Positions 1,664 to 64,000 of a DNA stretch of 64,000 bases are shown here, piece after piece. The notes beneath the pieces are model-generated. The model saw only the letters and a list, made by a program, of their open reading frames with translations, searched no databases and had not been told where the DNA came from. The translations under genes and the position numbers were made by a program. Origin of the DNA: Ophelia neglecta (Eukaryota); the NCBI GenBank assembly GCA_965285935.1, contig CBDIWN010000008.1, positions 806,001 through 870,000 of the forward strand, written 5' to 3'. Position 1 is the first letter of the stretch. Every line of letters starts with the position of its first letter.

Positions 1664-4600
1664 TCTTTTGTAGATTTGGCAACACGAATGGATGTGTGTT
1701 TCCATGTCTGTGCACTACTGGTTGTGACAGGACGACATGGGCGTGTTTGTCCCCAGGATTATGTCAGTTGGACGATCCCTCGACAGCCGGAATAAGGAGA
1801 ACCGGGGCTGGCTGTAGAATAGGTAAACCTTTCCGTTTTTCATTACGTTGGACACATTTTAACAACCCATTAATGTGTTTACTACATTGGGAATATAGAT
1901 GCAATTAGTTGCTCACAAATATCGAAAAATTTCGGAAAGAAAGCTTTTTATCAATGTATCAATATTTTGTTTTAAATTGATAACCACAATCAAGATTAAA
2001 TAGGACTAAATTTCCAAAACACGAATAGTAGGAATAACATAGTTGAAGGTTCACATAAACCGTTAAAAGAATAAACAAAATTGATTGACTTAGGTATTAT
2101 TTACAGTGTTAGACACTGAATTCCCAGTCACATTATTTGCCGGATCACCAATACTACTCACAGAACCGGCAGACGATTACAAATACTACTTACACAATGA
2201 CGAGAGTAGTTACCGGGGAGACGATTACAAATACTACTCATACAAAAAACGAGAGTAGATATCTGACAGACGATTTAAATCAGTAGTCACGAACGACGCA
2301 TTAAATCGCTCCCAATTCGTCCCCACAATTATAACACAATCAGGGAAGATATGTTATGGCCTATATTACCACACTTTGCATTCATTGTTCATTAAGAATT
2401 GGGGAAAAGACATAAATGAAAGTAGAAAAGAGCGGATAACAAATGTTACTATTCACTGATATTGAAATTTCTATGGATATGTAATGTAGCTCGGGGAAGT
2501 CCTACCAGAATGGACAATGGGATAACTCCCACGCGGGTTTACAGTGGATGGTATTATTACCAATAGCATATACGAATGTGAAAATCTGCATTTCTAGTTC
2601 AATTACAATTGGGACAAGCCGGACAAAGTGTACAGCCGGGAGAACTTTAAATACAGATACAGTTAATTGCTAACATTGAATTTGTTATTGTTAGGTAATG
2701 TAGCCCTTGGAAAGATTGCGTATCAGAGTGGACAGTATACTAATTTACGCGCTGGTCTGGCCGTTGACGGATTCATCACAACGAATATAAGTCGGTGTGC
2801 ACACCCTGACGCTGGGCCAGGGAAAAGATCTTGGTGGTACGTCGACCTCCTAGAGTTCTACACGGTTGTCAGTGTCACCATTTTTAACAGAAAGGATATA
2901 CAGTCCAGGGCCTACAGTAAGTTAGTGTAGCTTAAAATGGTTATAATGTTTTATTTCTAGTGAACCTGACCTTTCAGACAGTTTGATAATTTGTTATGAT
3001 CAGGTTATAAAACAAAGGTAATTTTATTTCGAAGCATACAGTTAAGTGAGATATTTGAGGAATTATATTGTTTGGACAAACGAAAATTTACACTAGTTTA
3101 TGACTATGGTCAAATGATGGCCGTATCTCTTTATGATCCAGGGAACAGCCTAGCATACTACTAATTGGTCAAATTATCCGGAGAAAGACTGTCTAAGTAA
3201 GTTTTATGATTAAAAATGTAATAACCATCATTGTTTGATTACAAGTTAAGAAGTTCTTGACTGATTAATGCGTATGTGTTACTTGTTATGAAGGAATAAA
3301 CGAAATTTGCCTGTGCTGTTAAAATAATGAATTTAGGAGCACAAGCAAAAACTACAATTAAGATAATAATCCGGAAACTGGTAAAGCCCTCTAATAAAGT
3401 ACTGTTAGTGTTTCAGCTAACTTTTTCCATATCTGTGACTCTATGTATCTTTACCCCTTATCAGGGGTTTCAATTTGCTTATGACAACCGGGTGACAAAG
3501 TGTGAATTAATCTCGTCAATGCCAAAGACTAAGGCTGTCTAGGTTAACTATATGAGAGGTGGGGATAAGGGTGTAAGTCTATAAACCCAAACTACACATG
3601 GAAATTACCCTGGTTGATAGAGTTCGGATGCTTGTATGAGTGGGAATGTGGGAGAGGATAATTGAAATAATGTGAGGAGGGGATGGAAACATAAAATACA
3701 CAATTGTTTGTGTGATTGCGATTTTGATCGAAGCGTGACGCAGTAGATAATAACTAAATAACAATAACAGGTAAAGAGTTCATTCCACCCTCCCCCCCCC
3801 CTCCACCCCCCCCCCCCCCCCCGCAAACCTTCAGGGCTAAACCAAACGTATATAGTGTTAAACAAATTGACTTAGTCAAAGCTACGTTGGTCACAAACGT
3901 GTCAATAAAACAAAGGCAGGCGCCTCTGCATTGCTTTGAAGACTTTTTAGCATGTTGTGTAAAAGCTCCAGTTACTGATGGTGCTAGGACTTTGTTATAT
4001 CTCCTGCTGTTTTAATTAATAGAGCGAACAGGACAGTTTCGACTTGGAATAGGAAATGTGACTGATGGTGACAAGACTGATCTCTGCAAGGACTATACGA
4101 AAATCATACCTGAGGGGGGACACGACACCATACAGTGTAACTCACCAGTTACTGGCAGATACGTGACCATTATCCGAGATGCAAACGGATTTCAGCCCCG
4201 ATTTCTCGGACTGTGTGAGGTTATCGTTCAAGGATATAAACCAATCAGTACGGTCTTGTCCTCACTCTTTCCATCCAGTATTCGTTTTGACTTTGATCGA
4301 AATATATGGTGGCACTACATTTACTTTCATAATTACGTGTGCATACCTTTTTACAGGTAACACGGGGCATTAAAAATAAGCAAATACAGGGTGTAAAAAC
4401 TTATGGCGAATTATCACCTAGTTTTTGGATGTATCTTTTAACTTTAGTTTATCGAGCTTAGATGCTCAATTCTTAATTGCCTGTATTAATTAATTCAGAA
4501 AAATAGTACACCTAAAATCATTCTTATTTGGTTTATTCCTTTTTTTTTAACTAATGCCTGAAGGAAGCTGACGAATTATGGCAAGTTATGTCTAAGAATG

Positions 4601-7600
4601 TGACAATTCAACCATAATCAATGTCGAATGTTTAATTATTATAAACATAAGGTCGGGCCAAAATAGATACTAGATATCGACAATGTGTTTTGAATGATGA
4701 AATAACAAAACAAAAACCGCATATACACATTCAGACGCTGTTTATGATTTATTTATTGTTTTGTAGTTTGCGACAGTGGCAGATGTCAGTCTTGCAGTTC
4801 TATTTCTGGTTGCGAAAAATGTGCTCCGGGAAGTGAATACCCAGATTGTAAAAAGGGTTCGCGCTTTAATGCATTTTTATTTGGCTGGTAGTTATTTCCA
4901 TTTTTAATTTCTAGACATCACTGTTAGATGTAAATATCTAATAGGGGTACTATTTCTCCCTGTTATCTTCACCGCGTTCTTTATGATATATTTTACAGAA
5001 TGCGACGATAATGAGTATGGCGACAATTGTGGAGAACGATGTAGTGTGAATTGCTTTAGAAATAATTGGTCCACCAATCGATCATGTAATATCTCGAGCG
5101 GACGGTGCTTGATTAGCTGTAACGAAGATTATTGGGGTGACAGGTGTGAATACACGTGTAATATGAACTGTCGGCGAATAGTTGGTGAAAAAGTTTGTTC
5201 ACAAGGTAACGGTACTTGTACCCAGGGATGCCTGAACCCTTACTACGGTGACCAGTGTCAAAACTCCTGCAGTAGTGGATGTAGTGTCATCTCGGGCTCC
5301 AACACGTGTCACATTGATACAGGCGCGTGTAACTACGGCTGTCAAACTGGATTCTATGGCGATAACTGCAATAAATCATGTAGTAATCAGTGTATTGATG
5401 TCTGTGATAGTCATAGCGGGTTATGTAGTTGTACGATTAATGCTTACGGCGATACGTGCAATCATAACTGTAGTAGTCACTGTGAGACTATAGAAAACGC
5501 ACATATCTGTGAGAAGGACAGTGGAGTGTGTACTCATGGCTGCCAACTACCACCGTATAGTACCTGGTATTCTGGAGACCTATGTGACCGACCGATAAAT
5601 AAAAACTGTTTTCCTTAACAAAACAATTCAACGAAAAATGGACATATTGTTTAATTAAATTCAATCACTTATATCGATTTAATTGCGGTTGTTTTACAGT
5701 GTACTTGGCCTACCCATCGAACCAACCAATGAAGATTATCAGTACCACGGCAACATCTGTCACCATTGGCTGGCCTCACATCCTTGTGGTTTCAAATGCA
5801 AACACTAAATTTTATGGCTATAGAATTTATGCCATTACAGGAAACCGAAAAATATCTTTTGAGCATGCCATTTCCGAAAACAATATTTCGAAACAATATA
5901 ATCTGACATTAGATGGCCTACAGGAAAACACTGTATATGACATTAAAATTACCCTGTATCGTACAGTTTTGGGTAGAACAGAAGAGAGTAGAGATAGCTC
6001 GGTGGTTGTATCTGTAACTACAGGTAAACTTATGGGCACATTTGTCGTATCTTAGTAATAAGTGAAACATATTTAGCCAATAGAAAGATTGAATCTTACG
6101 TCAAGGTATATGTACGGCAATGTTCAATAGGTATTGTACGATGCAAAGGTCTATATGAGGAATTTGTTGCTACAAGTCATATTCCAGAACTACTGCTTTA
6201 TTTTAACCAGGGCAAACTTCGCCTCTCTCAACTGGCGCATTGGCAGGAATCGTCATAGCGGCTGTTGCAATTATCACCGCCATTGGCATTACTATTGGTT
6301 GTCTTATTATCAAGTGAGTTGTACCAGAATAAGGGACACTTTCTATTTTATTTTATTGAGCAACTACGGCATTACGGTACTTAAATTCTTAAGTTAAAAA
6401 AAACATATTTAACTGGTTTGATGTTATAAGGTCACTAGATATATGGTGATAGTAGTATAGATGAAAACTTGTAGCGTGAATTGGTGTTGTCAAACTGTTT
6501 CATATGTAAACAGGTCCCAAAAGCAAACCCATTCAAGGAATGAATCAACACAAAATGAGATTCAGGGTCAGCCTACCCAGGAAGTTGACTTCACTGACTT
6601 AAGCGCGTATGGCGAATCGTCTACGACACAAGGCGGCAATGGTAAGAGGTTTTTAATTGACATTTTTTAATTGATGAGGTTTCAACATTTAACCATAAAA
6701 TCATATATTTCATATGTCAAGGGTTTTCACGAGAATTATATTGAGAGAATACAAGACAATCTGTCAGAAATCAATGCTGATAAATTTGTTTTGGGAACTG
6801 GAAAATTGCATTTAAAATGCCGTTTTATCAATTTGAGATAATTAAGATATAGCGGCAGACGACTAATCTCTTTTTAGTATATGGGTGGATCTGTGAAAAT
6901 ATATGCCGATAAATTGGTAAATGGTTATGCCACATACAATAGCGCTTATGGGACATATTCTAAGATTGTACATGCATCCGAAAGTACGATTTTGGGGCAG
7001 GCGGCTATTAACGTGTTTTTGTTTGTTTAGCCGCAAACTGCGTTCTGGACAACACACATGTCAAAAATGGCAAACAAAGCTGAATGTTCTTGCAATGTAT
7101 AAGCAATAACATTATTGTAAGACATAGATGGGTTATATTGATAATTGTCTTGTGAACTTCTCTGACTGATCAAATGATCATTGTATACCAAAGAATACGC
7201 AAGTAATTTGGGGCTTTTTACTTTGTGCAGTTCTTTGCCTTAAGACATTTTTACTATCATGTTACAATGAAAAAAAGGTTTGGAGTTTTTGGGTTAAACA
7301 TTTCCATTGCCCAATGGAAATCACCATGGAATATGATTTTGCATGAATTTTAAATTGCATTGCAGTGTGCCAAAAGTATAAACCTATTTATGCAGTTCTT
7401 AATTTTCTATATTAGCTATATTTTCTATATTTCTATATCAGTTTCCATATAATTTCGTTTGGTTAATCACACTTAATGATCTTTTAATGCGTAAATAGTA
7501 TGGATTAAGGAATGTTTTTATATGCATTTCAGCCAATCTGACTGGAGAGGAAAATCCGACGTACGAACAGTTAAATATAAATGAAGACTATGGGAAATAA
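1664..7600 (+). CDS. Paralog A: F-type lectin / EGF-repeat / FN3 single-pass receptor with short Tyr-motif tail; 5'-partial, splice-donor lesion (secreted form or decaying gene)
   Basis: Exons 1664-1822 (Cys-rich, VFCRFGNTNGCVFPCLC), 2695-2916 and 4023-4247 (F-lectin: NVALGKIAYQS..AVDG..CAH..WWYVDL..VTIFNR / GRYVTI..LCEVIV), 4767-4856, 4999-5598 (5 EGF-like units), 5700-6023 (FN3), 6211-6313 (TM GALAGIVIAAVAIITAIGITIGCLII), 6514-6641, 7533-7600 (ANLTGEENPTYEQLNINEDYGK*). Intron phases match B and C. The donor after the large EGF exon reads AT, not GT. No signal-peptide exon found in the window. Confidence 0.85.
2150..2280. repeat. Imperfect ~49-bp tandem repeat
   Basis: agacgattacaaatactact.atac..aa..acgagagtag occurs twice, with partial flanking copies. 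Confidence 0.7.
2481..2588 (+). pseudogene. Degenerate copy of F-lectin exon 1 in an intron of paralog A
   Basis: gtaatgtagctcggggaag..taccagaatggacaatgggataactcccacgcgggttt..gtggatggtattattacc aligns with the start of the intact exons (e.g. 15913 gtaatgtagcgcttagaaagccggcctatcagagtgga..gcgggtttggccgtggacggtattattacc). It has indels and no acceptor AG. Confidence 0.75.
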
Positions 7601-11480: not shown

Positions 11481-11510
11481 AGTTCCAGACGACCGCTCAG
11501 CAAGGAGAAC
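11481..11510 (+). promoter_or_regulatory. Conserved splice-acceptor-like motif upstream of each signal-peptide ATG
   Basis: T-rich tract + AG followed by (a/g)cgaccgctc(a/g)g at 11481, 25321, 40531 and 58461. Orphan copies occur near 12565 and 38711. Confidence 0.55.
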
Positions 11511-11576
11511 GTTAAATTCATTTTTAATGTATAAACGTTCGGTAGATGTGCCTGTATGTATACGTGCTATTTGGAA

Positions 11577-14500
11577 ATGGCTCCTATCACGTGTCTGTGT
11601 TGGCTGGTCATTTCCAGCGTCTTTCTTTCAGCTAGAGTTGCTGGTCAGCCAGGTCAGTAGATACTACTATTTTCATTTTGCAATAACACAATTTTGTTGT
11701 TGGCAGTGGTATGATTCAGGATTCAAAAGTGTGGAGGCATCTTTTTGGCGATACAATGCAAGACGACAATAAATGAGCCAATGTTTTGTCACATGGAAAA
11801 ATATTAGTTAAAGTTGGTAACCCGTATGGTCAAAATGGTAAACTTTGTCGATAGATAAATCATACGGACCTTGAGCGTATGAAAATAAAATATGTATATT
11901 TGTAACATATGTATATATGTATATGCCACATCCGTCAGATGTTCCTCTTACATAACTGTTCCTTTTATGCTTTTCTGTGTATCGAGGATCCAACTCCGAA
12001 GGTAGACCTTAGTTGCACCGAAATATTATATACTAATTATAAAGAAAGTTAAAGTCAAAGTATTTAAATTATATTCGGCTGTAGTGGTCTGTTTATAGAG
12101 TTTACCGCTTTCACGTGTAACTATATCTAATACAACCCATCCTAATCCGACTGCATCTTATACCACCCGTCCTAATCTGACTATATCTTATACCACCCGT
12201 CCTAATCTGACTATATCTTATACCACCCGTCCTAATCTGAATTCATCCTATGGAACCAAACTACATCCTATAAAAATCTTCCTCATCTGACTACATCTTA
12301 TCAAACCCATTTTATTAGGACTTCATGTTATATGAAAATTGGCACATATGCCGAAATGAAAAGAACACGCCATTAGCATCATTTTATATGCAAAATGCAT
12401 ATGGCGTTCTTTTTTCATTCAGATTTTAAGGAGGGTAACATAAATGTGACAGTATGATTCAATGCAATATGAATTGGTAAAAATATATGGCATCGCTGCA
12501 AAAACGTTATCCTATACAAAGCCATGAAGTCGATGCTTAAACGGTGTGTATAGTGTTGTATTCACATTCAGGGCCGCTCGGAAACCAGGGTGTTAAGATC
12601 ATTTTAATGCACACACTAACTATAGCCATACCTATATTCCTCTCTAACCGGCTCATAATTCACTATAAACACTCGAATGGCAGTTATCTCATGGGAAGCA
12701 TGGCTTCGGTGTGACCCGAGACAACCTGTCACAAGCGAAATGCCGTCAGCTTTTGTATGTGTAATGCAATAAAGCTACGGTGAACGTTTGCCGGATCTTC
12801 GCCTGAAATTTAGAATATTAGGTGTTTAATATTACGAGGAGGCGCTGATAACCTCTAAATCCCTCAAGAGGATCCTACGTCCTGTAGATCTGCCAGGGAC
12901 CCTGACAATCTCTAAATCCGCCACGGCATTCTTTGCCTAAGAGCTTCAGCCCGTCACTGAAAGTTTGCTTGGCAAAAAGATATGCACATATAATGTCTTC
13001 CTTTTGTTGATTTTAACAGTAGACACGTAGCCCTGGTGTCAAGATGGCTGACGCGGGGATACGAATTCTGCAAGTTTAAAAGGTCATTTTTTTAGCTTCA
13101 CAGATAAATGTTCGACATATTTATTTCTTCGGGCTCTTGGAGAGTCAAACTACGATCAATGACTCCACTTAAGACTGCTCGTGCGTAGGTTCTAGTTACC
13201 ATTGTTTAGACCCACGCATTTAAACATTGCAAAGGCTTTGAGTGTTTAATTCCGCTCATCATAGGCTTGGGGCAATGTGCATCTGTTTCATCCCATCCAA
13301 TATTATCGATGTAAAACACCAATTCAAAACACACAAAGTCGAACTACGGTCAATTTCCCAGATGCCTTCTGCCTCTGCTGGCTTGTTCACGGGTATGTTC
13401 TTAATGTATTTAACAAATTTCATGGCATTTATATACACAGCAACTTGGTCCTCGCGGTAAAATAATGGGTATGGTCCAACCGTGCTGGTTTGTTTATTTG
13501 TTTATCACGGCATTGTCTTCTAGTAGTAGAGATGGCTTACACCTAGTTATTTTACAATGGGTGAAAATAGAATAATATTCTATTCTATTCCCTTCCAATC
13601 CCAATTTAATATTATTGAGCTGGTTAAGATTATTTTCATGTTCAGAGCATGGCACCCAGAAGTAATGATAGTGTATTTTTGTATCATTTAGCCACACGTC
13701 GCGTCCTCGAAGCTTGTTTTGATTAGAGGAGAGACATTGTAATTATTTGGTTTAAAGATGGCTGGTAAGAATAGTCATTCAGATCTGAATCTTTTGGTGC
13801 CGGTGTCTTTAAAGCCCTTTATCTATTGCATTGCCAATGAACATAGCTTGGGATTGCTTTCTGATGAGTTCGATTTAATGGACTAGTCTTTGCCAATGAT
13901 TTGCTTTGTGCGCCTGGAAGTTAGTGTATTGATTTCTGTTTTCAGTATTCGATAGCACCCTGTGTAAGATCACAGCCGCCGGTCGCGAGTACAATGGTAC
14001 ACTAGCCGTGACAACAAGTGGTATAATATGCCAGAGATGGGACAACCAGTCCCCTCATTCTCACACGTACAAAAACTCTAACAATTTTCCGGATTCGTCA
14101 TTGGCGGCAGCTAATAACTATTGCAGGAATCCTGACCCCGGATGGTTCGATGGTGTTTGGTGTTACACCTTGGATCCGAACACAAGATGGCAACTGTGTG
14201 ATATCCGATTCTGCTCAGGTAATCTATTCTGTATTTACCTATAACATGATTGTTTACTTTCATATACCTTGTCCGGTCAAAGTCCGATTTCCGAAACCAG
14301 CTGCACAAATAAACGATCGATGCGAGACAAAGATACGCAACCACACATGGCCCAATAGTCCGAAAGAAACATGAGCTGGTATAAATGCAAAACACGGAGT
14401 GGAATAATAGGTCAAAATTTTAAAAACAAAGATATAAGGGTTCTAAAGGCGATCGTGTAGACGATTTGGTTTGTTAGATACATGGCGATCTACTACGGAA

Positions 14501-20500: not shown

Positions 20501-20760
20501 CTTTCGAAGCTTTTCGTTAGTGCAGATTTCTTGGCCATGAGGAACACTATGGAATAGTGTTATGTTCTTTATTTTGCCATATTCCATTTCACTTGGAATT
20601 GTAGTCCTGTATGATCTTTAATAAATGTAATGTGCCATTTAAGGATGGTTTTATATGTTTTACAGCTAACCTGACGGAAGATGGGAAACCTATGTACGAA
20701 CAATTTCACCCAAATTCAGATTATGAAGAAATAGACAAGATAGGTGGCTCCAAGCAATAA
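11577..20760 (+). CDS. Paralog B: kringle + F-type lectin + EGF repeats + FN3 single-pass receptor with tandem Tyr-motif tail (~762 aa)
   Basis: Exons 11577-11652 (signal peptide MAPITCLCWLVISSVFLSARVAGQP), 13946-14218 (kringle), 15364-15519, 15913-16125, 17246-17470, 17999-18088, 18218-18817, 18900-19229, 19533-19635 (TM GALVGIVIACVASLTIVTIVIGCQFF), 19863-19990, 20666-20760 (ANLTEDGKPMYEQFHPNSDYEEIDKIGGSKQ*). All introns GT-AG; total 2289 nt, open frame. Confidence 0.88.
12121..12330. repeat. 30-bp minisatellite (ctatatcttataccacccgtcctaatctga)
   Basis: Four near-identical 30-bp units at 12121-12240, followed by degenerate units. Confidence 0.9.
13946..14218 (+). CDS. Kringle domain exon of paralog B (phase 1-1)
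   Basis: Flanked by ttttcag| and G|gtaatc. Translation LCKITAAGREYNGTLAVTTSGIICQRWDNQSPHSH..NNYCRNPD..VWCYTLDPNTRWQLCDIRFC has six Cys and the NYCRNPD and WCYT kringle motifs. Confidence 0.92.
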
Positions 20761-22192: not shown

Positions 22193-22194
22193 CT

Positions 22195-25100: not shown

Positions 25101-25945
25101 CTTTATGTGGCAAAAACGTTCGTAACTTTATTTCATAAAAATAAAATGTAAACGCATTGCGATTAGTATGAATAAAACTGCTTCAAGTACCTTTACCATT
25201 ATGTTTATGCTGGAATTGAGTTCCCGATGAATTAGAATAAATAGTTATGACATCCCTACAAACACTCCTGATTGTATAGCCACTTTATTCACTGCTAGGC
25301 GTGTTGAGACGAGTTTATTTAGTTCTAGACGACCGCTCAGCAAGGAGAACTTTAAATTCATTTTTAATGTATGCACGTTCGGTAGATGTGCCTGTATGTA
25401 TACGTGCGATTCAGAAATGGCTCCTATCACGTGTCTGTGTTGGCTGGTCATTTCCAGCGTCTTTCTTTCAACTAGAGTCGCTGGTCAGCCAGGTCAGTTG
25501 ATATATGTTTGCTATTTTCGTTTTGCAATAACACAATATTTTTGTTTTTGGCAGTGGAATGATTCAGGATTCAAAAATGTGGAGACATCTTATTTATCGA
25601 TACAATGCAAGACGACAGTAAATTAGCTACTGTTATGTTTCATGTAAAAATATCAGTGTATGTTGGAAACTCGTATGTTCCTACTGTTAAACTTTGTGGA
25701 TGAAAGGTCATACGGACTTTATAAGCACTTGAAACGAATACTAGCAGATATGTATATATATATATATGTAACGTTATTAGCCACATCCGTCACATGTTCC
25801 TCGTAACGTTACATAACCCCATTTCCTTTTATGCTTTTCTGTGCATCGAAGATCCAACTCCGGAGATAGACCTTAGTTGCACCGCAATATTACATATTAA
25901 TTATAAAGAAAGTTAAAGTTAAAGTGCTTAAATTATATTCGGCTG
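22195..25945 (+). repeat. Duplicated intergenic / first-exon block, copy 2 (upstream of paralog C)
   Basis: Colinear homology to 8868-12080, interrupted by mostly different sequence at about 22820-24290. Confidence 0.9.
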
Positions 25946-49600: not shown

Positions 49601-52600
49601 TTATCAAGCAATTAGATAAGTTGTCACAATTCAGGTTTACAAATTCATTAAGATAAAGATTGAAAAAAGTTATGATAATTAAATATAATTTATAATAACA
49701 TTTTAAAACAATATATTAAGAATAAAAATATTAAAACAAAACCTATGCAACTATTTTTATTTATAATTAGAAAATTAAATACCAACAAAATCAGAATAAT
49801 ATTCCAAACGAGTATCAAACACTACTTTTGAAATTTTTTTTTCCAGGACCGAAGCCTGAAACAGCCTGCGCGTTATGGTCTATGGTCTGGCAGTTACAGT
49901 CAAATCGTATTGTTATGGCAACACGAATTAAAGAACTCACCAAGGTTTGTCAGTGTGAAACAGTATGAATTTTATGATATATTGTATTATTTTGGTATTG
50001 AGGTATGAAATCCCGTTTAAGTGTTTCAACAGAAACATTGACCATTCCAATTCGTTTTATTAATTACAGACAAAGTGTGTACCGTATTGGCCCGAGGAAG
50101 TTGGAGAGAGTGTAACCTATGATGATATTACAGTGACTACCACGGCCTGTGATTCATATGCCGACCATAATCTAACAATCATCAGCATACAAAAAGGGGT
50201 AGGTTTTACCTTTTTACACACTTAACTATATAGGTAATAAGTAAACGAACATACATTGGTTTGTGCGTCAATTTCTCTAGTCTTTCTTTTTTGCCTTCAC
50301 ATTTTTACCTATCTATAATAGCACATGTCACGAAATGTACGACAAATCTACGAAAAGCTATGGCTTGCGTCAACAAAATATGCATACCATCTGTCCAAAA
50401 ATAATCAAAATATTCAATTTAAGCCTTTCTTTAGTTTAGCTTATACATGCAGCCCACCGGATTCCCAATACTCATTCATTAGTTTAGTGCCAACTTACGA
50501 GCGCAGTGCTCAGTAGTAATACACTGTAGCTGGAATATGTTATCATTTGAGATTCTCTAACACATGAATCGTCATATAGTGTGGTCACCTTGTCCAACCT
50601 CCGTTTTTACCTATCAATTCAATATATTGCCACCACTAATTAATATAGAAACAATCAACACAATATATATTTGAAATAAGAAAAATAATGTTTTCCTATT
50701 CTAGAATGAACAAAGGACAGTAAAGCACTTCCAATTCCTTTCCTGGCCAGACAAACAGGCCCCAGAGCACGCATTTCCTCTCTTGGCCTTCAGAAGAAAA
50801 CTGAGATCATTTGACGGGGAGGGAACAGGACCAATCGTCGTCCACTGCAGGTCAAATAACCGATTACAAGCACACACTTAGTTTGATTAAGAACAATTCA
50901 AGGGTATTTATAAAGGTACAACACATTTAAGAATAAATATATATAATTTTCTCTCTAGTGCGGGAATAGGACGCACAGGGACATTGATTGCTCTGGACTA
51001 TCTTCTTGACCAAATGAAAGGAGAAGGAAAGGTAGACATCTTCAAATGTGTGACACAACTCAGAAATGAACGCATGGACATGGTTCAATCCTTGGTAAGA
51101 CTTTTTTGTGATAATAGTCTAGTTGAGAGGATTCTAGGCTTTCACATGAGCCAATGTTACATGTTTCATGTCAGCAACCATGAGTGTAGATCCAATGGCC
51201 ATGTGTTGAAGCAATAAGAATGTTGCTTCTAGAAAGCTTTTCGTTTTTATCTGACTCATTGATTATAGAAAGTCGGCCGTCGACTTCTCAAAAAAAAAAA
51301 TTCTTAATGTAGATAGTAGTAATTCATCTTTTAATTATGATGTTCAGTGTTAAAAATTCGATATCAAATTTTGAACCTAGCTACATATCACTGACTGCTG
51401 TTATCCGGCAATTGGTACCATAAGGTAACTTTTCTCCTACTTTCAGTCACAATATGAATTCATTTACGAGGCACTGCTAGACGCATACCAGCAAGGAGAG
51501 ACCGCCATTCCGTGTAACCTCTATCCTGAGAGGTATACACAACTGATAGACGGAAATGAATATTCCAATGAGGTTCCCATCGAAGAACAGTTCAAGGTGG
51601 GTTTTGTATACATATAATTAAATTCCATTCATTTGCGTTTTTGCTGCAAAATTTCATCATTGATTAATTGACAAAAAATTTCAATACATTAGTATTTGGA
51701 GATTAAATTATTATGCCAATTATGAATAATTGCATTTATTTAATCGTATTTGTATCATTTTCTAAATTTACATTCACATTATTCAATATGATAATGTTTA
51801 ATGTATGAAAAAGTGTAAAAGTAAAATGCAATTTATGTTATCTATAAAAACACTAAAATAACAATTTGGCAAATTTTAAATGTCATCCGGTTGTATTTCC
51901 ATCGTACGATACAATCATGGCATGATTTACAGATCCTCTCCAAAATGAAACAACACAAGAAGTCAGCTGACAAACTTAGTGCTCTGAGTAAGGAAAATAA
52001 GCGGAAGAATCGAGATGCTGATATAGTGCCAGGTACATAGTTATATATAACGGATATACAAATTGATCCTCTATGGAATTGTGTGTTCGTTTGCTGAATC
52101 AAATAAGTCAACGCAACCATCTGTGTACTATTGTTTTCCTCTATAGATAATAAACACAGGTTGTTTCTATCTACGAGATGTTCGGGCACAAATGACTATA
52201 TCAATGCCGTTTTCGTCAACGTATGTACGAGTTTAAGTACATCTCAACCTACATTCAGCTTTTCCACCCTAGCAGTTATCTTCCTTTTAGATTGCTGAAT
52301 AACTATTCATATATGTCTTCGCATTAGTGAGGGTCTCCTTAATGATGATTTCCGGCTGATTAGTGGACAATTCTTAATTCATAATTTCACTGTTTTGAGT
52401 CTTTCGTAAGTACCGAATCAATATAACTAAAAAGCCACTAATAGTTGGAATACTCTTGGTTTCTTCCACTATTTATTAGAGTTATCTGTCGGAGAAGACA
52501 TTTATTGCGACCCAATTGCCATTACCTGATACTATCATTGACTTCTGGCGTTTGGTGTACGAACAAAAGTGCCACACTGTGATTACTGTAGAAACATCGT

Positions 52601-53788
52601 CCCCTGACCCCGAGGTAGATGACCGTGTTTCTTTCAAGACAAGAATGCAATACGAATAGCCAGAAGTTAAGTTATCGAATTTACATATATCTAACTATAT
52701 AAACTGGGTCCATATATATCATCAGGATTGTCCCAAGTACTGGGATTTGGAGAAAGGGGAAGTTAGGCATTTTGGTGACCTTGAGGTGCGCATCGATTCA
52801 AAAGACGAAGATGAGAAAGATGTCATAGAAGAAAGAAAATTCACAGTGTCATTTTCCTCAAGTGTAAGTCTATCAATTTAAAACTCATGGATTACTTGGC
52901 ATATGGCAATTATTAAGCGTCAACAGAAATATATTATTTTTGATTACAACATTATTTTAATTATATCGGTTATATAATAAATTACAGAACCAGCCAGTAA
53001 GAGTCTGCCATATATTGTTCAAACAACGTCCAGATATCCAAAATCTGCCAGTCATGGAGGACACGTTAAATTTGTTAGAACGGATTCAGAAGAGTCAACG
53101 ACAAGCTGAAGTTGGAAACATTGTTATGCAATGCAAGTAAGTTATAAACACATTACCACTGTTTGTAAAAGAACTAACACACACATAAATAAGCCAGCTT
53201 CAACCCTATGTTACATCTTTCTTAAAACTCTTCTGAACTCTCATTGCCTTGTGGTCACGCGTGGTAAGGTGATATGTGATAAAGGAGAGTATTGATCTCT
53301 TTAAAGCAGCCCGAACCCTAATTAACTTATCATTTACTACTTCTGTATTTCTCAGAGATGGAGCTAGTCGAAGTGGAATGATATGTGCGGCACATTATAT
53401 GCTGGAGAAGATGCAGGAAGAGCGCGAGGTGGACGTCTTTCTTGCTGTTAGGGTTGTATCTCTACACAGACAACAATTTGTCAACAATTTGGTAAGTAAT
53501 ATAACTAATCGGTGTATTGCCGGAAGGATTTTCAAGAATTGTTCAAAAGGTTACTTTTCTGTAATTGATAAAATAATTTAAAATTTCAAAAGGTCTGTGT
53601 ATATTCAACAACATTAATTTGCAATGATAGTACACTATTTATACATCTGTTATCTGAATCATGTATATTAAGATATCGCCACAGGTAAGATCCATATTTC
53701 CATTTCTTAACAGGACCAGTATCGTTTCTTACATGGTATTGCAATGGAGTATATTACAAGGAACAAGCTCTATGGAACCTTTAAGTAG
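40653..53788 (+). CDS. Paralog D: receptor-type protein tyrosine phosphatase with F-type lectin / 9 EGF-like units / FN3 ectodomain and tandem PTP domains (~1413 codons; one internal TAA at 44330-44332)
   Basis: 25 exons: 40653-40728, 41985-42137, 42990-43205, 44259-44486, 44762-44848, 45062-46114, 46389-46736, 47130-47244 (TM), 47415-47500, 47621-47835, 48446-48533, 48802-48872, 49536-49575, 49847-49944, 50070-50198, 50705-50850, 50959-51094, 51447-51596, 51933-52032, 52147-52220, 52480-52614, 52726-52863, 52988-53136, 53356-53491, 53714-53788. Total 4242 nt with all intron phases consistent. Confidence 0.9.
44847..44980. repeat. Three ~45-bp tandem copies that include the 5' splice donor
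   Basis: aggtagg..tacc.tgttaac.t.cattat.t.ttagaca at 44847, 44892 and 44938. Confidence 0.8.
48446..51596 (+). CDS. PTP domain D1 of paralog D (catalytic motifs intact)
   Basis: Spliced motifs in canonical order: [75 protein letters not shown]. Confidence 0.95.
51933..53788 (+). CDS. PTP domain D2 of paralog D (probably a pseudophosphatase)
   Basis: [42 protein letters not shown]; WPD loop reads RPD; P-loop VMQCKDGASRSG; Q-loop reads FVNNLDQY; TAG at 53786-53788. Confidence 0.9.
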
Positions 53789-58605: not shown

Positions 58606-61600
58606 ATGTCTCCTATCATTTACATTTGTTTGCTGGTCAGTTCAAGTGTTTACCGATCAAGAGTTACCGGTCAGACAGGTTAGTAGATATGTTCTTTTTA
58701 TGAACTTATTGTTATTACTCGATCCCCTTGTTGTTGGCCGCGGCATTATTAAGTATTCATAGTTGTTTTAACTTATTGTTAACCCGTAAAGTTAAACAGT
58801 GATTATTATGAAAATAGAGTCAGAAAGCATCTGAAGCACACATATGATATGGTCAGGAATGCTTTAAAAATCAGTTGCCGTCGTGGTGTTGACTATACAT
58901 GTTCTTAAGTTACAACCAAAATCGTGACATTAGCCAAAGACGACCTGTTCACGTCAGAAAGACCTGCAGAGCTTGACACATTGCTTGCCCAACATTAGTA
59001 TCTAGGTCTTATTATTTCACTATCCCACCAGTGACATTAAACGCATTGGAAGGGAAGGTATCCGTTTCCAATGAACATGATATTAAATCATCAAATCACT
59101 GCACCTGGGATCTTAAAGCTCACATTAATATCAATCTCGTATGTAAAGTTTTGTGTTGTATCCAGGGCCGGTTGCGTCCCGCAAATAGAGAACGGCGCCA
59201 GGGGGTGGGTTTGGGGAGCGGCCTTCGGAAAAGGGTGGCATAGTTGTCACTTCCCGCAAGCGAGATTTCAAAGAAGCGTTTTTATTGAAAACAAACTTAG
59301 AACGCTATCGAGAATAACGGAAGGCCTCCGTGATAAATTAAGGATATTTGACAGCTTGGATGAACTATTTTGTACAAAATGTGATAAGGTTGCTCTGACA
59401 ACCTCTAAATCTATAAAGGGTGTCTGACAATCTCTAGATCCGACAGTATAACTACTTATCGATCCGCCAGATTGCTCCAGAGGGCTCTGACAACGTCAAG
59501 GGGCCTGACTGCAGCTAGACCCGCTAGAGAACCTGGCAATCTCTAGATCCCCCACCGGACTCTTAACCAAGAGCATTAGTTCGCCTCAGAGTATTTGCAT
59601 GACTGTCGGCTATACACACAGTGCCTTGAATACACAGGATATAAGTCTCATTATATGTTTGTACTGGATGTTTAAGGAACCCCGGTTTCTATTTGAAGTA
59701 GGCAAAAGACTGCTATAAGAACCTTTCGGCTCAGAGGATTCTCTTATATTTCGGATCCCGTTTTGTACCCTACTGTGGGTTTAACATCGTGTTTGACAAA
59801 CTTCTGAATTCATATTTCATTTTGTAGGCTACCGATGAATTATTATTTTTGTCTGTCTAGCTTGAAAAATAATTATTTATAATATTGTAACACATCAGTG
59901 AATATGGAAAACCTCAGCGTGGAAATTTCTTATGGGTATAGTAAGGTAAAGGAAATCAGGGGATTGTATGGTGGTTTGTCAGTGCTTCATTTGGTATTTT
60001 TGTGCTGCGAGTTTGACCCACAATAATACCAAATGCACATAGTTCTGACCGCAAAATAATACTGTTTGCCGCATTGATGGTTTGTCAATGCTTCATTTGG
60101 TATTTTTAAAAATGATACCGTTTGCCGCATTGACCGAGGCAAAAAAAGGATCACAAATACAATTACTATTACAAGTACTAAAGCTAGTATGGCGCTTTTG
60201 ATGCTTGGAAACGAAACAAGACAAATTAATAGTTTATACTGAGTAAACGCTATTAACAAATTTATCCGAAAATGGAACGAAATTCCGCTGCGGAGGCCGA
60301 TATGAGGTTTGGAGGACGAAGGAAGAATAAAATAGCTCAGGGTTGTAGAATTTAATTGCATCTATTGCATCATATATAATTATTTTATGTATGTCATTGA
60401 TTTGAACTGTTTTATTTGAACTGATTCATGTAATACTTGGGAAGAACAATTTGCTGACAGCGTGCTTCAGGGTAAAGATAGTTGATAAAAATTGAAATAT
60501 CTGACTTTCAACGGAATTAGTTAGTGCCCTCGGATACGTTCAGCTAACAACAGGACGCTCGTCAAACGCACACAACGTTAGTAGCGCTACAATGCTGTCG
60601 TGTCAAAATATACTACTAATATGAAATTTTATAATTCGTCGATGTATTCTTCTAAACAAGTAGGTTCATGTGTCGCAGATTACGTTTGATATGTTTGGCC
60701 CACCACACTCCTCGTTGTAAATTAGTTTTTCTTTTTGGCCCGACTTTTTGGAACAAACTTTTACGAATCAAAGAAAGCCGTGGTGCCCTAAGAAAATGTT
60801 CAAGAATACTTATTTGTTTCATGTTTTTGTCGAACATCAAGTCCTACCATTTAAACGTTTCCCTTGACATTTTTCCCTCAGGTCTGTGTAGGTTTGGGAA
60901 TATTACTGGCTGTGTATTTCCCTGTCACTGTACCAACGGTTGTGATCAGACGACAGGAGATTGTATCGACGGAGGTGAATGTGAATGGGATGACCCTGCC
61001 ATCATACGGAGAGAAGGGCCTGGGTGTAAACGCGGTAAAATTTCTGTTTCTATTCATATTAAAACGGTAAAAATAGAGTATCTTTGAAAGTGTTATACTG
61101 TGTACTTAACAACTTTCATTTAACCATTACGTCATTTCCCGAAACCGTTTAACAAGCAGACACCTGGCGCACATTATCGCTAATACTAGCTAACTTTCAA
61201 GTTCTTTTTTGTGTAATATAAGATATAAACACTCCATAATTCTCATTTTAATAATATGATTTACATTTTTCTTCAACATTCAAAATATAATCAATAACTA
61301 TATGCAGTATATAATTAATATATTAGGAAATATCAGAACTACCCTGACAACGTTGAAAAGAATAAATACTATGCCATGGGGATATGTGAATTTATGAATG
61401 CACTTACGACACCTATTTATTCAATCAAAACCTAAGAGAGCCCAAACTCTAAGAACAATAACTAGAAACTTTAGGAGAATGGATAACTTTGCTAGGCGTA
61501 AAATGTCTACAAGAGCTGTGAATTGGATCTTCTGCCAATGTTGGAGACAAAGGAATGTTTGGAATCACTAGCACCAGTATATGCAAATATTGTAAATTTG

Positions 61601-64000
61601 CCATTTAAGAGTTGTACTTTTCAATATATGTTGAAGAATGCTGTGAAAAAAAACAATTTAGAAAGCTGGCGTGAGCAAAAATATAATGGCCAACTACATT
61701 TGTGATTCAAATATATCATATTTGTCTAAAGTTCTGAACAGACTGTTGCCCTGAGACTGTCTGAACATTTGGTTGTAAATGAGCTCGGAGAGACGTTCCA
61801 GACAACCTATAAACAATAACATAGTGCAGAATAATATTCATTAATTTGTTCATGTCTTTTTATATATCTCGATCTGCCAGCGGCTTTGAAACATTAATCA
61901 TTCATCTCTGCTGGATCGTATACAGCTGAGAGTATGTATATAGGAAGAGAAGCCCTCAATTGGTTTAAATCATACTTGGGTGGTCTTACCGAGAACGTTG
62001 AGATTTGTAGCGACCTGTCTTATCCTACTTTTTTTAAATGTGAGGTTTTCAACAGGGACGTATTCTAGGACATATTTTGTTTCTTATATGCACACTCCCT
62101 TTGGGGGATATTGTAAGTTTTTCTCAACGTATCCACTTTCGTCGATATGCAGATGATACACAATTATATTCCTCGCTTTGATGGTGGTTCATCTGACAGG
62201 GAAACACCATGGAATACAAAGCTAGAATTATGTATCAAAGATTAAAGGGAATGGATAGCTACAAGCTTCGGCCAAAATATTACGACCAGTTAATAGATAA
62301 TGCTGCCATTGCCATTGGAGAAACTGAAGTCATTTGGTGTAAATCAGCAAGAAGCATGAGAGCTATTTTTCAAAGAATGTGGCTCCTGATTAAGCACATT
62401 GATGGCATGTGTTCTAGTGGCTCTGTATACGTAGGAAATATGATTGTTATGGCAATGAATAAGACTGTGATATTACTATAATATAGTATATAGAGCTGTA
62501 AAAACCTATAGTGCAGGAAGAGGGCGGGTCTACACGTGTCAAACAATGTTTGCATGCCCTTTTTCCGATCCCTACCCGAACCAATAATGTCTCAACCTCT
62601 TCCCGCGTCAGACCTGGAGTGAAATGCAAATAAATATTTATGCCCTACCAGAGAAATGCTTGTATAGTATGCATCGCATACAATATGATGCTTTTAAATT
62701 TCTTGTTTTGTATTATTCTATGATTATGAGGATCGTTTTATGCATTTGCTGGTAAAGTGTATTTTCCGTTCTGTTCGCCCTTGTGGTTTACTCAATAGGT
62801 TATTCTATGATTAAATACAGCATAATAGACCAGACTGTTTTATCAGTATTTTGTATAAACAGGTAATATAGCGAAGGGAAGGCCGGCATATCAAAGTGGA
62901 CAAGTTTTCAATTTAGCCGCTGATCTGGCCGTCGATGGTAGAATCGTTACATGGGCATTTCATTGTGCACATCCTGATGCTGGGCCTGGGAAGAGAGCCT
63001 GGTGGTACGTCGATCTAGAGGATATCTACACAGTTGTTAGTGTCACCATCTTAAACAGAGAGGATTCTCCATATCATAGTAAGAAAAGAAAAAAAACGAC
63101 GGCCATATCTAAAGACAGAAATAGAATAATTATCTTAGGTGCACGATAGTAGCATCAATCACATCATTACTTATAATTGTTTTCGTCCCTCCCATGCTGT
63201 TCTCATTGGCAAAAAAATAAATTCTAAATTGTACTTTATGTGTATGCTTTTGATAGACCACCAGTACGAGTATTGCTACTTACACATCTAATATATTTTA
63301 GCATTAAAACTAATTGAAGTCCCATGAGTTGGAGTTCCCATTTAATACAGGGGTCGAAGGCAAATGTAACCTAGGCTTGTGAATAATTCCCTCTAAAACA
63401 GGATACAACTTTAATACAAAATCATTTGCGAAGCAACCATCGCAAAACTAAATATTTTGTGTCCTTGATTGTTAGCTACGGTACTGGTAAAGCAAGCTTA
63501 ACACACAATGTGAATACGTGGTGAAAAGGTAAAGAGGTATTTCCCACAACACACTGTTTTTGGTATTAAATCTTCCACTATTTTATTAGAATTCATTCTA
63601 TAAGTGTAAACTTCACCAACAAAATAGCCTGGTGAGCTACTTAAAAACATGTCAACACAACCTCGAGATAATGTACACATAGCCCTTAAGCAAAACACCA
63701 TTTGTTGATTTATAAATTAATTATCAGTCACACCCATATTCGTCTGTACAACACATGATTCAAGGTTACTGTAAGTGTCGCTCTGAGGACTATGTATTTG
63801 TATCCAGGAATACCATTTTACAGATCTTACAGCTAATTTTCGCCTTGGAGTTGGATCCGAGACAGACGGTGATTTAACAAGTCTCTGTAAGAATTATACA
63901 GGAGTCGTTCCTAGAGCAGGAAACGACACAATATATTGTGACTCGCCCCTCAGCGGCAGATACGTCACCATTATCAGAAATGCAGGCGGGTATCAAGTCC
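58606..64000 (+). CDS. Paralog E: F-type lectin receptor family member, 3'-partial (runs off the window)
   Basis: Exons 58606-58678 (signal peptide MSPIIYICLLVSSSVYRSRVTGQT), 60882-61034 (Cys-rich), 62863-63078 ([39 protein letters not shown]), 63824 to window end ([29 protein letters not shown]). Confidence 0.88.
61480..62450 (+). mobile_element. Decayed CR1/L2-clade LINE reverse transcriptase fragment in an intron of paralog E
   Basis: Frameshifted RT motifs in the correct order: LDLLP..KECLESLAPVYANIVNL..LKNAV, LSKVL..RLSEHL..FQTTY, LDL.AAF, QG.ILG.ILF, RYADDTQLY (about 62143-62170). Confidence 0.8.

What the first reader, a model, noticed from the sequence alone, without database searches (positions are those of the whole stretch)
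1664..64000. Candidate paired-receptor system: one F-lectin/EGF/FN3 ectodomain family wired to either a Tyr-motif tail or a tandem tyrosine phosphatase
Seen: five tandem paralogs share exon structure and intron phases wherever they can be compared. A, B and C end in tails of about 65-75 aa with Tyr motifs, while D ends in D1+D2 PTP domains. Established: F-type lectin domains bind fucosylated and related glycans; EGF-stalk receptors of the CED-1/Draper/MEGF10 type signal through NPxY and YxxL motifs; vertebrate paired receptors (Siglec, LILR, KIR) are tandem clusters with related ectodomains and opposite outputs. Inference: this is an invertebrate glycan-sensing cluster whose inhibitory arm carries its own phosphatase instead of recruiting SHP-1/2, and the short-tailed neighbours could be its substrates. 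I cannot establish novelty without a database search.
Basis: partly seen in the sequence, partly recalled or inferred. Interest (0 to 1): 0.9.

Follow-up and report, generated by a model that had tools for sequence, protein, structure and literature searches.

The report
Lectin receptors with swappable phosphatase tails
This window is part of a very large invertebrate gene family of sugar-binding surface receptors whose near-identical outer parts are joined either to a short tyrosine-motif tail or to a built-in tandem tyrosine phosphatase, a layout that resembles vertebrate paired immune receptors and that I could not find described.

Summary
Five + strand tandem paralogs (A-E) share one exon plan: signal peptide, 8-Cys module, F-type lectin (two exons), 6-Cys module, one EGF-array exon, FN3 and TM. 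All ectodomain introns are phase 1.

A, B and C end in tails of 65-74 aa with NPxY/YxxL-type motifs. D ends in tandem PTP domains.

Corrections:
- D carries one in-frame TAA (44330-44332) in its lectin exon. Its closest paralogs have TAT or TTT there.
- A has lost the canonical donor of its EGF exon.
- A-C are not D's closest partners. They form ectodomain group I. D and E belong to group II.

In 264 kb around the window, group II holds both PTP-tailed and short-tailed genes. Their ectodomains are 73-96% identical in protein. DNA identity is 87% through introns and stops just after the FN3 exon.

PTP-type ectodomains are not one clade (AU p=0.0015). Lectin exon 2 has dN/dS of about 1.1, against 0.16-0.18 for the PTP exons.

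Genome-wide there are at least 150 FN3-exon copies, and 42 of them have a PTP exon downstream.

Function (matched receptors with different phosphotyrosine outputs) remains inference: no RNA data were available.

Two other first-stage notes had flagged this family on other DNA of the same genome.

The parts
1664..7600 (+). Gene A (group I, short tail). Signal exon lies off the window. Exons: 1664-1822, 2695-2916, 4023-4247, 4767-4856, 4999-5607(?), 5700-6023, 6211-6313, 6514-6641, 7533-7600.
   Evidence: Open frame of 641 aa, all sites AG/GT, provided the weak donor at 5607 is used. The tail holds NPTYEQL and EDYGK.
5595..5607 (+). Lost canonical donor of A's EGF exon. A reads ATAAAT where B and C have ATAG|GTAACA. 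A weak GTTTTC donor 13 nt downstream keeps phase 1.
   Evidence: read directly from the sequence.
11577..20760 (+). Gene B (group I, short tail), 10 exons: 11577-11652, 15364-15519, 15913-16125, 17246-17470, 17999-18088, 18218-18817, 18900-19229, 19533-19635, 19863-19990, 20666-20760.
   Evidence: 671 aa, no internal stop. The tail holds NFYEEP, KPMYEQF and SDYEEI.
25417..35277 (+). Gene C (group I, short tail), 10 exons: 25417-25492, 28657-28809, 30682-30897, 31631-31855, 32378-32464, 32628-33227, 33330-33659, 33963-34065, 34284-34408, 35183-35277.
   Evidence: 669 aa, no internal stop. F-lectin exons match 3CQO and 1K12. FN3 scores 30.8 bits against a cut-off of 25.
40653..53788 (+). Gene D (group II, receptor tyrosine phosphatase), 25 exons, all AG/GT, about 1414 codons with one internal stop.
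42990..44486 (+). D's F-type lectin domain, two exons: 42990-43205 and 44259-44486.
   Evidence: Pfam F5_F8_type_C and NedA-like domain match exon 2. The exons are homologous to C's, which match solved F-lectins.
44330..44332 (+). In-frame TAA in D's lectin exon, at the conserved Tyr position (CK[NKL]Y-TG in paralogs).
   Evidence: The closest paralogs L024 and L025 read TAT and L023 reads TTT. The reads did not resolve it.
45062..46114 (+). D's EGF-array exon: 351 codons and 56 Cys. Group I has 32 Cys and the other group II genes have 38.
   Evidence: The best database matches are molluscan proteins named MEGF10/11 or SREC-like.
46389..46736 (+). D's FN3 exon.
47130..47244 (+). D's transmembrane exon (phase 2 donor).
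48446..51596 (+). D's PTP domain D1, 8 exons including the small exon 49536-49575. It reads [13 protein letters not shown] and an intact Q loop.
51933..53788 (+). D's PTP domain D2, 7 exons. It reads RPD in place of WPD. C-x5-R is kept but the Q loop is lost. The stop codon TAG is at 53786-53788.
58606..64000 (+). Gene E (group II, short tail), cut by the window end. Exons: 58606-58678, 60882-61034, 62863-63078, 63824->64000. The rest lies at C16:870055-873414.

Best explanation
The window is a slice of a lineage-specific, tandemly arrayed family of type I membrane receptors. The best database matches are molluscan.

Every member has the same ectodomain, one module per phase-1 exon: signal peptide, 8-Cys module, F-type lectin domain, 6-Cys module, MEGF/SREC-type EGF array, one FN3, then the TM. 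Behind the TM sits one of two cytoplasmic cassettes:
- a 65-75 aa tail with four conserved tyrosines: N(V/F)YE(E/K)P, GY, NPxY overlapping YxxL/F, and 9 residues later (S/T)DYE(D/E)(I/V);
- or a juxtamembrane region plus a catalytically complete D1 and a degenerate D2 tyrosine phosphatase.

Shown here:
- There are two ectodomain groups. Group I (A, B, C) has short tails only in the stretch examined.
- Group II (D, E and their neighbours) carries either cassette on ectodomains that are 73-96% identical.
- The switch point lies in the FN3-TM intron.
- Ectodomains and tails have been re-assorted by recombination or gene conversion.
- The loops around the F-lectin His/Arg motif change faster than silent sites, while the PTP exons are under strong purifying selection.
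- Genes are born and die. Of the 12 genes examined, D and g883 carry nonsense codons, g788 is truncated and A has lost a donor.

Inferred:
- The receptors bind variable glycan ligands.
- A multivalent ligand would co-cluster short-tailed and PTP-tailed receptors of like specificity and equal ectodomain length.
- The phosphatase would then act in cis on the tyrosine-phosphorylated tails or on the kinases that serve them, which would set the threshold or sign of the response.

This is the logic of a paired receptor, with the phosphatase built in rather than recruited through an ITIM.
For: Architecture and phases.

F-lectin: 3CQO at E 9.4e-10 (exon 2) and 7.2e-08 (exon 3); 1K12 at 2.8e-4. The His of CAH and the Arg of NR are invariant in all 12 genes.

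PTP: Pfam hits on both domains. D1 is closest to LAR/PTPsigma and PTPalpha/epsilon. The PTP exons of g767 and g913 are intact.

Pairing:
- Per-exon protein identity of g913 (PTP) to g751 (short) is 88/73/91/90/84/90%. To g767 (PTP) it is 92/75/84/83/79/83%.
- blastn of g913 against g751 gives 87.2% over 2.1 kb including introns, ending about 45 nt after the FN3 exon. g913 against g883 gives 87.0% over 2.4 kb, ending 24 nt after it.
- g913 against g767 gives only 80.5% in the ectodomain part but 94.0% over 7.6 kb of the PTP part.
- In the ectodomain tree, groups I and II split at 100/100. Holding the PTP-type genes together is rejected: AU p=0.00145 for all three, p=0.024 for g767+g913.

Selection:
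- Group II dN/dS is 1.12 for lectin exon 2 and 0.34-0.67 for the other exons. It is 0.16-0.18 for the PTP exons at dS 0.48.
- The variable columns cluster in four loops next to the His and Arg.

Genome-wide:
- At least 150 FN3-exon matches.
- 42 of them have a D-type PTP D1 exon 2.8-6.1 kb downstream on the same strand.
- Among the 21 FN3 exons at least 88% identical to g913's, 10 are PTP-linked.

Shared 5' flanks and signal exons are 88-92% identical between the two tail types.
Against: - There is no expression evidence. The only runs found are DNA contigs of one sample.
- D, the only PTP-type gene in the window, has a premature stop. 4 of the 12 genes examined look damaged, so part of the array may be non-functional.
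- The F-lectin motif is non-canonical: H-x28-R instead of H-x26-R, the Asp is not always present, and the last basic residue is displaced. Fucose binding is not assured.
- The sign of signalling is open. The tail's last motif fits the ITIM/ITSM consensus, the YxxL-x5-YxxI spacing is one residue short of an ITAM, and RPTPs can activate Src-family kinases.
- Contig C16 is probably a haplotig of C7 at about 90.5-91.1 Mb (98% identity). Copy numbers are therefore inflated, and some 'paralog' comparisons could be allelic.
- dN/dS near 1 over short exons and few genes can also mean relaxed constraint.
Confidence: 0.55

Rival explanations
1. This is a birth-and-death multigene family with exon shuffling and no functional pairing. 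Short-tail genes would be MEGF10/SREC-like endocytic or engulfment receptors, with NPxY acting as an internalisation signal. PTP-type genes would be ordinary RPTPs that happen to have captured the same ectodomain. The two would work in different cells or pathways.
For: Phase 1-1 exons make shuffling easy. Molluscan F-lectin+EGF+TM proteins without a PTP exist and are named MEGF10 (P0095). Group I has no PTP partner in the 264 kb examined. There are no expression data.
Against: Ectodomain re-assortment between the two tail types is recent and repeated: 87% nucleotide identity through introns, AU rejection of a single PTP clade, and a near 1:1 mix of tails among FN3 exons at least 88% identical. 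The 5' flanks are 88-92% identical between types. This is easier to understand if keeping matched ectodomains on both tails is useful.
Confidence: 0.28
2. The locus is largely a decaying array. D and many of its neighbours would be pseudogenes, and the apparent system an evolutionary relic with little present function.
For: D has a TAA in exon 3. g883 has a stop in exon 2 and no TM or second-tail-exon match. g788 has a truncated EGF exon and half an FN3. A has lost a donor. A few genome-wide hits contain stops.
Against: B, C, g767 and g913 are open with canonical splice sites in all the exons I examined. D has only one defect in about 1414 codons. The PTP exons show dN/dS of 0.16-0.18. More than 95% of genome-wide FN3 and PTP exon hits have no stop.
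Confidence: 0.08
3. The family serves self or partner recognition rather than microbial glycan sensing, for example allorecognition, gamete or larval settlement recognition, or cell adhesion. The lectin loops would diversify against the animal's own polymorphic glycoproteins.
For: Diversifying lectin loops and apparent differences in gene content between C16 and C7 are also typical of allorecognition and reproductive loci. RPTPs with adhesion-type ectodomains act in cell-cell contact.
Against: Nothing here speaks directly against it. It changes the ligand and not the paired-output mechanism, so it overlaps with the best explanation.
Confidence: 0.2

Closest known systems
Vertebrate paired receptor clusters (KIR, LILR, Siglec, Ly49, PIR, SIRP)
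   Same: Tandem clusters. Closely related ectodomains sit on alternative signalling tails. Ectodomains are exchanged between the two forms by recombination or gene conversion. Ligand-binding surfaces evolve fast. Genes are born and lost, and gene content may vary between haplotypes.
   Different: The fold is F-lectin/EGF/FN3 rather than Ig or C-type lectin. No TM charge is present for an ITAM adaptor. The tyrosine motifs sit in the receptor's own tail. The counter-arm is a covalently attached tandem PTP rather than an ITIM that recruits SHP-1/2. Opposite outputs have not been shown.
CED-1 / Draper / MEGF10 / Jedi-1 and SREC (SCARF) receptors
   Same: The EGF arrays have the same cysteine pattern. 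The best database hits carry these names at E down to 2.5e-36, with at most 40% identity. All are single-TM proteins with short tails holding NPxY and YxxL-type motifs.
   Different: No EMI or NIM domain was detected. An F-type lectin sits at the N-terminus and an FN3 next to the membrane. The tail spacing is YxxL-x5-YxxI, not a canonical ITAM. The family is massively expanded.
Classical tandem-domain receptor PTPs (LAR/PTPsigma type R2A, PTPalpha/epsilon type R4, CD45)
   Same: TM followed by a juxtamembrane region, then an active D1 ([14 protein letters not shown] loop) and a degenerate D2. The D1 exons match these proteins best (E 2e-17 to 4.5e-21).
   Different: The ectodomain is F-lectin + EGF array + one FN3, not Ig/FN3, MAM or carbonic-anhydrase-like. 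There are dozens of copies per genome. They are interleaved with non-PTP genes that share the same ectodomain.
F-type lectins (Anguilla agglutinin 1K12, striped bass FBP32 3CQO) and molluscan F-lectin/EGF membrane proteins (e.g. Elysia P0095)
   Same: Sequence similarity across both lectin exons. The framework His, WW-VDL and NR residues are conserved. The Elysia-type proteins also combine an F-lectin with an EGF array and a TM.
   Different: The canonical H-x26-R-x-D-x4-R/K motif and the CC pair are altered. Here the domain is one module of a signalling receptor. The Elysia proteins have no FN3 and no PTP form was seen among them.

Membership tests
F-type lectin (FTP/fucolectin) domain | Sequence similarity to experimentally solved F-type lectin domains. 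| tested here: met
   C's exon 2 against 3CQO gives E 9.4e-10. It also matches 1K12 (2.8e-4) and 3LE0 (4.4e-4). Exon 3 against 3CQO gives 7.2e-08. Pfam F5_F8_type_C and NedA-like domain match D's exon 2 above the cut-off.
F-type lectin (FTP/fucolectin) domain | Fucose-binding motif H-x(24-26)-R-x-D-x4-(R/K). The motif itself is recalled from the literature. | tested here: inconclusive
   His and the first Arg are invariant in all 12 genes, but the spacing is H-x28-R. The Asp is present in A, D, E and g913 only. A conserved Arg (in ERTG) follows 6-10 residues later, and E lacks it.
F-type lectin (FTP/fucolectin) domain | Beta-sandwich fold and actual binding of fucosylated glycans. | not testable with these tools
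   The domain is split over two exons.
Classical receptor-type PTP with tandem D1-D2 | Two Y_phosphatase domains behind a TM segment. | tested here: met
   Pfam PF00102 matches exon series 48.8-51.2 kb and 52.5-53.6 kb. The TM exon is at 47130-47244. The exon chain is in phase.
Classical receptor-type PTP with tandem D1-D2 | D1 catalytic signature: WPD loop, HC-x5-R and Q loop. | tested here: met
   Read directly from the sequence: [18 protein letters not shown] and RNERMDMVQ in D, g767 and g913.
Classical receptor-type PTP with tandem D1-D2 | An uninterrupted reading frame, meaning a functional gene. | tested here: not met
   D has a TAA at codon 173. The neighbours g767 and g913 are open in all the exons I compared.
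CED-1/Draper/MEGF10 engulfment receptors | N-terminal EMI (and NIM) domain. | tested here: not met
   No Pfam family matches the 8-Cys exon even at E up to 1. An F-lectin follows it instead.
CED-1/Draper/MEGF10 engulfment receptors | Atypical EGF array, plus NPxY and YxxL/ITAM in the tail. | tested here: met
   The EGF exon matches MEGF10/11- and SREC-named proteins. NPxY-xxL is present in A, C, g751 and g901. It is degenerate in B (KPMY) and E (NQMY). The spacing is one residue short of an ITAM.
Paired (activating/inhibitory) receptor cluster | Tandem genes with closely similar ectodomains and different cytoplasmic outputs. | tested here: met
Met for group II: 73-96% protein identity and 87% nucleotide identity including introns, up to the FN3-TM intron. 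10 of 21 near-identical FN3 exons are PTP-linked.
Paired (activating/inhibitory) receptor cluster | An ITIM on one form, and a charged TM residue recruiting an ITAM adaptor on the other. | tested here: not met
   The TM segments have no charged residue. The motifs sit in the short tail itself, and the other form has an intrinsic PTP.
Paired (activating/inhibitory) receptor cluster | Opposite signalling outputs on the same ligand in the same cell. | not testable with these tools
   No RNA runs were found. No biochemistry is available.

The most novel reading that the evidence does not exclude
This would be an invertebrate, germline-encoded recognition system of matched receptor pairs. Recombination in one intron (FN3-TM) repeatedly places the same fast-evolving F-lectin ectodomain on either a tyrosine-motif tail or an intrinsic tandem phosphatase. 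Each ligand specificity would then exist in two signalling versions that co-cluster on the ligand. The phosphatase would replace the vertebrate ITIM-SHP relay, making this an independent invention of paired-receptor logic.
Probability: 0.3. Interest if true: 0.85.

Novelty: new variant of a known kind. Interest (0 to 1): 0.72.

Why it matters
Paired receptors are regarded as a hallmark of vertebrate immune gene clusters. In them the inhibitory arm recruits a cytosolic phosphatase. A large invertebrate family that reaches the same layout with an F-lectin ectodomain and a covalently attached RPTP would be a convergent solution.

It would give comparative immunology a tractable case. The switch point is a single intron. 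The variable loops are defined. Natural matched pairs and natural null alleles, such as D, exist for testing.

It would also give a biological role to the unexplained expansions of 'MEGF10-like' and 'receptor-type tyrosine-protein phosphatase' genes seen in lophotrochozoan genome annotations.

Tried and rejected
- **FN3 profile against 1.84 billion representative proteins.** Only 77 hits came back. The top ones are bacterial multi-FN3 proteins. One 203-aa Logan fragment (P0003, run ERR14113986) is D-like. That library holds little of this family.
- **Word-indexed protein searches.** The length window of 0.55-1.75x excludes the full-length relatives of single exons. They returned only molluscan MEGF10/SREC-like and Elysia F-lectin/EGF proteins. 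No F-lectin+PTP architecture could be looked for.
- **Sequencing runs.** Only three DNA contig sets of one sample were found, and no RNA. The table of differences was truncated and does not show position 44330-44332, so the stop is neither confirmed nor refuted. Exon bins have several-fold more summed depth than intron bins. I attribute this to paralogs at least 90% alike and not to expression. None of the listed joints lies on a splice junction.
- **Literature.** I found no paper that describes an F-lectin RPTP or a phosphatase-type paired receptor. One snail genome paper only lists 'PTPRK' among expanded families in a figure legend. One search failed on term length.
- **Considered and rejected.**
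  - The ATG at 1623 as A's start: it is in the wrong frame relative to exon 1.
  - Reading D's TAA as selenocysteine or an intron: it is TAA, it lies inside a conserved exon, and the paralogs have Tyr or Phe there.
  - Alternative splicing of one gene into both forms: no short-tail exons lie inside the PTP-type genes.
- **Complex prediction.** Not attempted. D1 is split over eight exons and cannot be given by reference.

Full report
**What is in the window**

The window (G000:C16:806001-870000, + strand) is AT-rich animal DNA with no N runs. All-against-all BLASTP of stop-to-stop ORFs shows five co-linear sets of + strand exons.

Reading the boundaries gives one exon plan for all five genes:
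- A signal-peptide exon. B and C encode MAPITCLCWLVISSVF... and D and E encode related peptides. A's lies upstream of the window.
- An 8-Cys exon.
- Two exons that together make one lectin domain.
- A 6-Cys exon.
- One large EGF-array exon.
- One FN3 exon.
- One TM exon.

Every ectodomain intron is phase 1 and the TM donor is phase 2. I checked phase and stops exon by exon in a script:
- B (671 aa) and C (669 aa) are open, with AG/GT at every site.
- A is open (641 aa without its signal exon) only if a weak GTTTTC donor replaces the canonical donor of its EGF exon, which now reads AT.
- D is a 25-exon gene (40653-53788) with canonical sites throughout and exactly one internal stop.
- E is cut by the window end.

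**Domain identities**

C's lectin exons match solved F-type lectins. Exon 2 hits striped-bass FBP32 (3CQO, E 9.4e-10), eel agglutinin (1K12, 2.8e-4) and the streptococcal F-lectin 3LE0. Exon 3 hits 3CQO at 7.2e-08. Pfam places D's exon 2 in F5_F8_type_C and the NedA-like domain above the cut-off.

The framework His (CAH) and Arg (NR) are invariant in all 12 genes I examined. The canonical motif is altered, however, to H-x28-R with a variable Asp and a displaced last Arg. The fold assignment is therefore good, but fucose binding is not assured.

- FN3 passes Pfam's cut-off (30.8 bits).
- The EGF exon has only weak Pfam hits. It matches molluscan proteins named MEGF10/11 or scavenger receptor class F at E down to 2.5e-36 and at most 40% identity.
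- The 8-Cys and 6-Cys exons match no Pfam family.

D's cytoplasmic exons match Y_phosphatase twice. D1 reads [14 protein letters not shown] and an intact Q loop, and is closest to LAR/PTPsigma and PTPalpha/epsilon. D2 reads RPD, keeps C-x5-R and lacks the Q loop.

**Tails**

The tails of A, B and C are 65-74 aa, encoded by two exons. They carry N(V/F)YEEP (absent in A), GY, NPxY overlapping YxxL/F (KPMY in B) and a last (S)DYE(E/D)(I/V) (EDYGK in A).

The last motif fits the ITIM/ITSM consensus. The YxxL-x5-YxxI spacing is one residue short of a canonical ITAM. This comparison rests on my own knowledge of those consensus sequences. The sign of signalling cannot be read from the sequence.

**D's stop codon**

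D reads CKL-TAA-TG where paralogs have CK(N/K/D)Y-TG. Its three closest paralogs are 91-94% identical in DNA. Two read TAT and one reads TTT at that codon.

D's PTP exons differ from those of g767 and g913 with dN/dS of 0.16-0.18 at dS 0.48. D was therefore under purifying selection for most of its history. The stop is recent, allelic or an assembly error.

The only sequencing runs available are DNA contigs of one sample. They did not resolve the position.

**The neighbourhood changes the picture**

The 264 kb hold 12 genes, all on the + strand:

| Gene | Ectodomain group | Tail | Note |
|---|---|---|---|
| g751 | II | short | |
| g767 | II | PTP | |
| g788 | I | short | EGF and FN3 truncated |
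| A | I | short | EGF-exon donor lost |
| B | I | short | |
| C | I | short | |
| D | II | PTP | nonsense codon |
| E | II | short | |
| g883 | II | short | stop in exon 2 |
| g901 | II | short | |
| g913 | II | PTP | |
| g934 | I | short | |

Group I and group II ectodomains separate at 100/100 support. A-C are therefore not D's nearest partners. Their FN3 is 31% identical to D's.

Within group II, PTP-tailed and short-tailed genes have ectodomains 73-96% identical per exon. g913 (PTP) is as close or closer to g751 (short) than to g767 (PTP).

At DNA level:
- g913 aligns to g751 at 87.2% over 2.1 kb including introns. The alignment ends about 45 nt after the FN3 exon.
- g913 aligns to g883 at 87.0% over 2.4 kb, ending 24 nt after that exon.
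- g913 aligns to g767 at only 80.5% across the ectodomain part, but at 94.0% over 7.6 kb of the PTP part.

The AU test rejects a tree that holds the three PTP-type ectodomains together (p=0.00145), and also one that holds g767+g913 together (p=0.024). I defined the groups by tail type before building the tree. Recombination violates the tree model, so I read this as evidence of mosaicism and not as a dated history.

The 5' flanks and signal exons of both tail types are 88-92% identical. This makes similar regulation plausible but does not show it.

**Selection**

Among six group II genes, lectin exon 2 has mean dN 0.141 and dS 0.126, a ratio of 1.12. The other ectodomain exons give 0.34-0.67.

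The variable columns of exon 2 fall into four short patches: after QSG, before CAH, after DAG and after NR. The framework between them is invariant. These are the loops next to the His and Arg of the F-lectin site. That they correspond to the binding-site loops of solved F-lectins is recalled from the literature and was not tested here.

The samples are small, and a ratio near 1 also fits relaxed constraint.

**Genome-wide**

- The FN3 profile finds at least 150 exon copies out of 299 candidates. They lie on C16, on C7 at 79-104 Mb (including an array at 89.1-89.96 Mb spaced about 10 kb apart), on C2 and on C5.
- D's WPD exon finds at least 150 PTP exons.
- By coordinates, 42 FN3 exons have a D-type PTP exon 2.8-6.1 kb downstream on the same strand.
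- Of the 21 FN3 exons at least 88% identical to g913's, 10 are PTP-linked by this test.
- A's 3' region has a 98% identical, co-linear copy on C7. C16 is therefore probably a haplotig or a very recent duplicate, and counts are upper estimates of distinct loci.

**How it probably works**

Shown: the modular architecture, the two alternative cassettes, the switch point, the mosaic history, the fast-evolving lectin loops, the conserved phosphatase and the gene turnover.

Inferred:
- The ligands are glycans.
- Receptors of like specificity and equal ectodomain length co-cluster on a multivalent ligand.
- D1 then acts on the phosphorylated tails or on their kinases.

Because both forms have the same ectodomain size, exclusion of the phosphatase by size, as proposed for CD45, is unlikely. 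Co-ligation is the more natural reading.

**Comparison and novelty**

The system works like a vertebrate paired-receptor cluster, but it fails that family's molecular definition. It has no Ig or C-type lectin fold, no charged TM residue and no ITIM/adaptor split.

The short-tail genes resemble Draper/MEGF10/SREC in their EGF array and tail motifs. They lack EMI and add an F-lectin and an FN3. The PTP genes are classical tandem RPTPs with an ectodomain that I did not find described.

Full-text searches returned no description of an F-lectin RPTP or of a phosphatase-type paired receptor. Novelty is therefore likely but not proven.

Two other first-stage notes on other pieces of this genome (s1-730838, s1-734093) describe the same family. 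They are unchecked, and my genome-wide counts agree with them.

**Verdict**

Mechanism confidence is moderate. This is a new variant of known kinds, and of high interest to comparative immunology if expression and biochemistry bear it out.

Noticed in passing
G000:C5, about 96-112 Mb, 5-7 Mb and 16-19 Mb (outside the window): More than 100 further matches to D's PTP D1 exon at 62-74% identity, in dense arrays. Only one FN3 hit of this family lies nearby. The genome seems to hold other very large RPTP expansions with unknown ectodomains.
   Followed up: no
G000:C7:89127277-89964686: About 45 FN3 exons of this family, all on the + strand and roughly 10 kb apart, with no PTP exon match between them. 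This looks like a long, uniform array of short-tail-type genes.
   Followed up: no
window 6400-9400 and G000:C7:90993734-90996724: A's tail and 3' flank have a 98% identical, co-linear copy on C7. Downstream of it, however, C7 has group II-type FN3 exons where C16 has B and C. C16 may be an alternative haplotype with different gene content.
   Followed up: partly
window 5595-5607: Gene A's EGF-exon donor reads AT where all paralogs read GT. Only a weak GTTTTC donor 13 nt downstream keeps the frame, so A may be mis-spliced or decaying.
   Followed up: partly
C16:885432-885650 (L002) and C16:790820-793563 (L011): g883 has an in-frame stop in lectin exon 2 and no detectable TM or second tail exon. 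g788 has an EGF exon cut to 92 aa and only the second half of its FN3, with 2.7 kb between exon 4 and the FN3 remnant. Both look like pseudogenes.
   Followed up: partly
C16:763258-763352 and 765400-765494 (L014/L013): The signal-peptide exon and 5' flank of PTP-type gene g767 are present twice, 2.1 kb apart. This is a local tandem duplication.
   Followed up: no
G000:C7:90865897-90868381 (L024 covers part): This gene's lectin exon 3 is 91% identical in DNA to D's. Its FN3 exon, however, is only 63% identical in protein to that of g913, about as distant from g913 as the E-like short-tail genes and as D itself. No PTP exon was scored downstream. It may be a short-tailed partner of the D subgroup, or another mosaic.
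   Followed up: no
window 44000-49999 (read laying): Summed contig depth is several-fold higher over exons than over introns in all three DNA runs, and many variant contigs were laid. This is consistent with many paralogs at least 90% alike and with a highly polymorphic sample.
   Followed up: partly
L021 (Logan contig of run ERR14113986): A 203-aa predicted protein (P0003) holds a D-like FN3, read-through intron sequence and a TM-like stretch. The family, or this same species, is therefore present in another public data set of unknown organism.
   Followed up: partly
D2 domains: window 52988-53491; C16:778013-778749; C16:923880-924612: The D2 pseudo-phosphatase domains differ in which catalytic residues they keep. 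D has RPD with C-x5-R. g913 has RPD with C-x5-H. g767 has WPD with C-x5-H.
   Followed up: no
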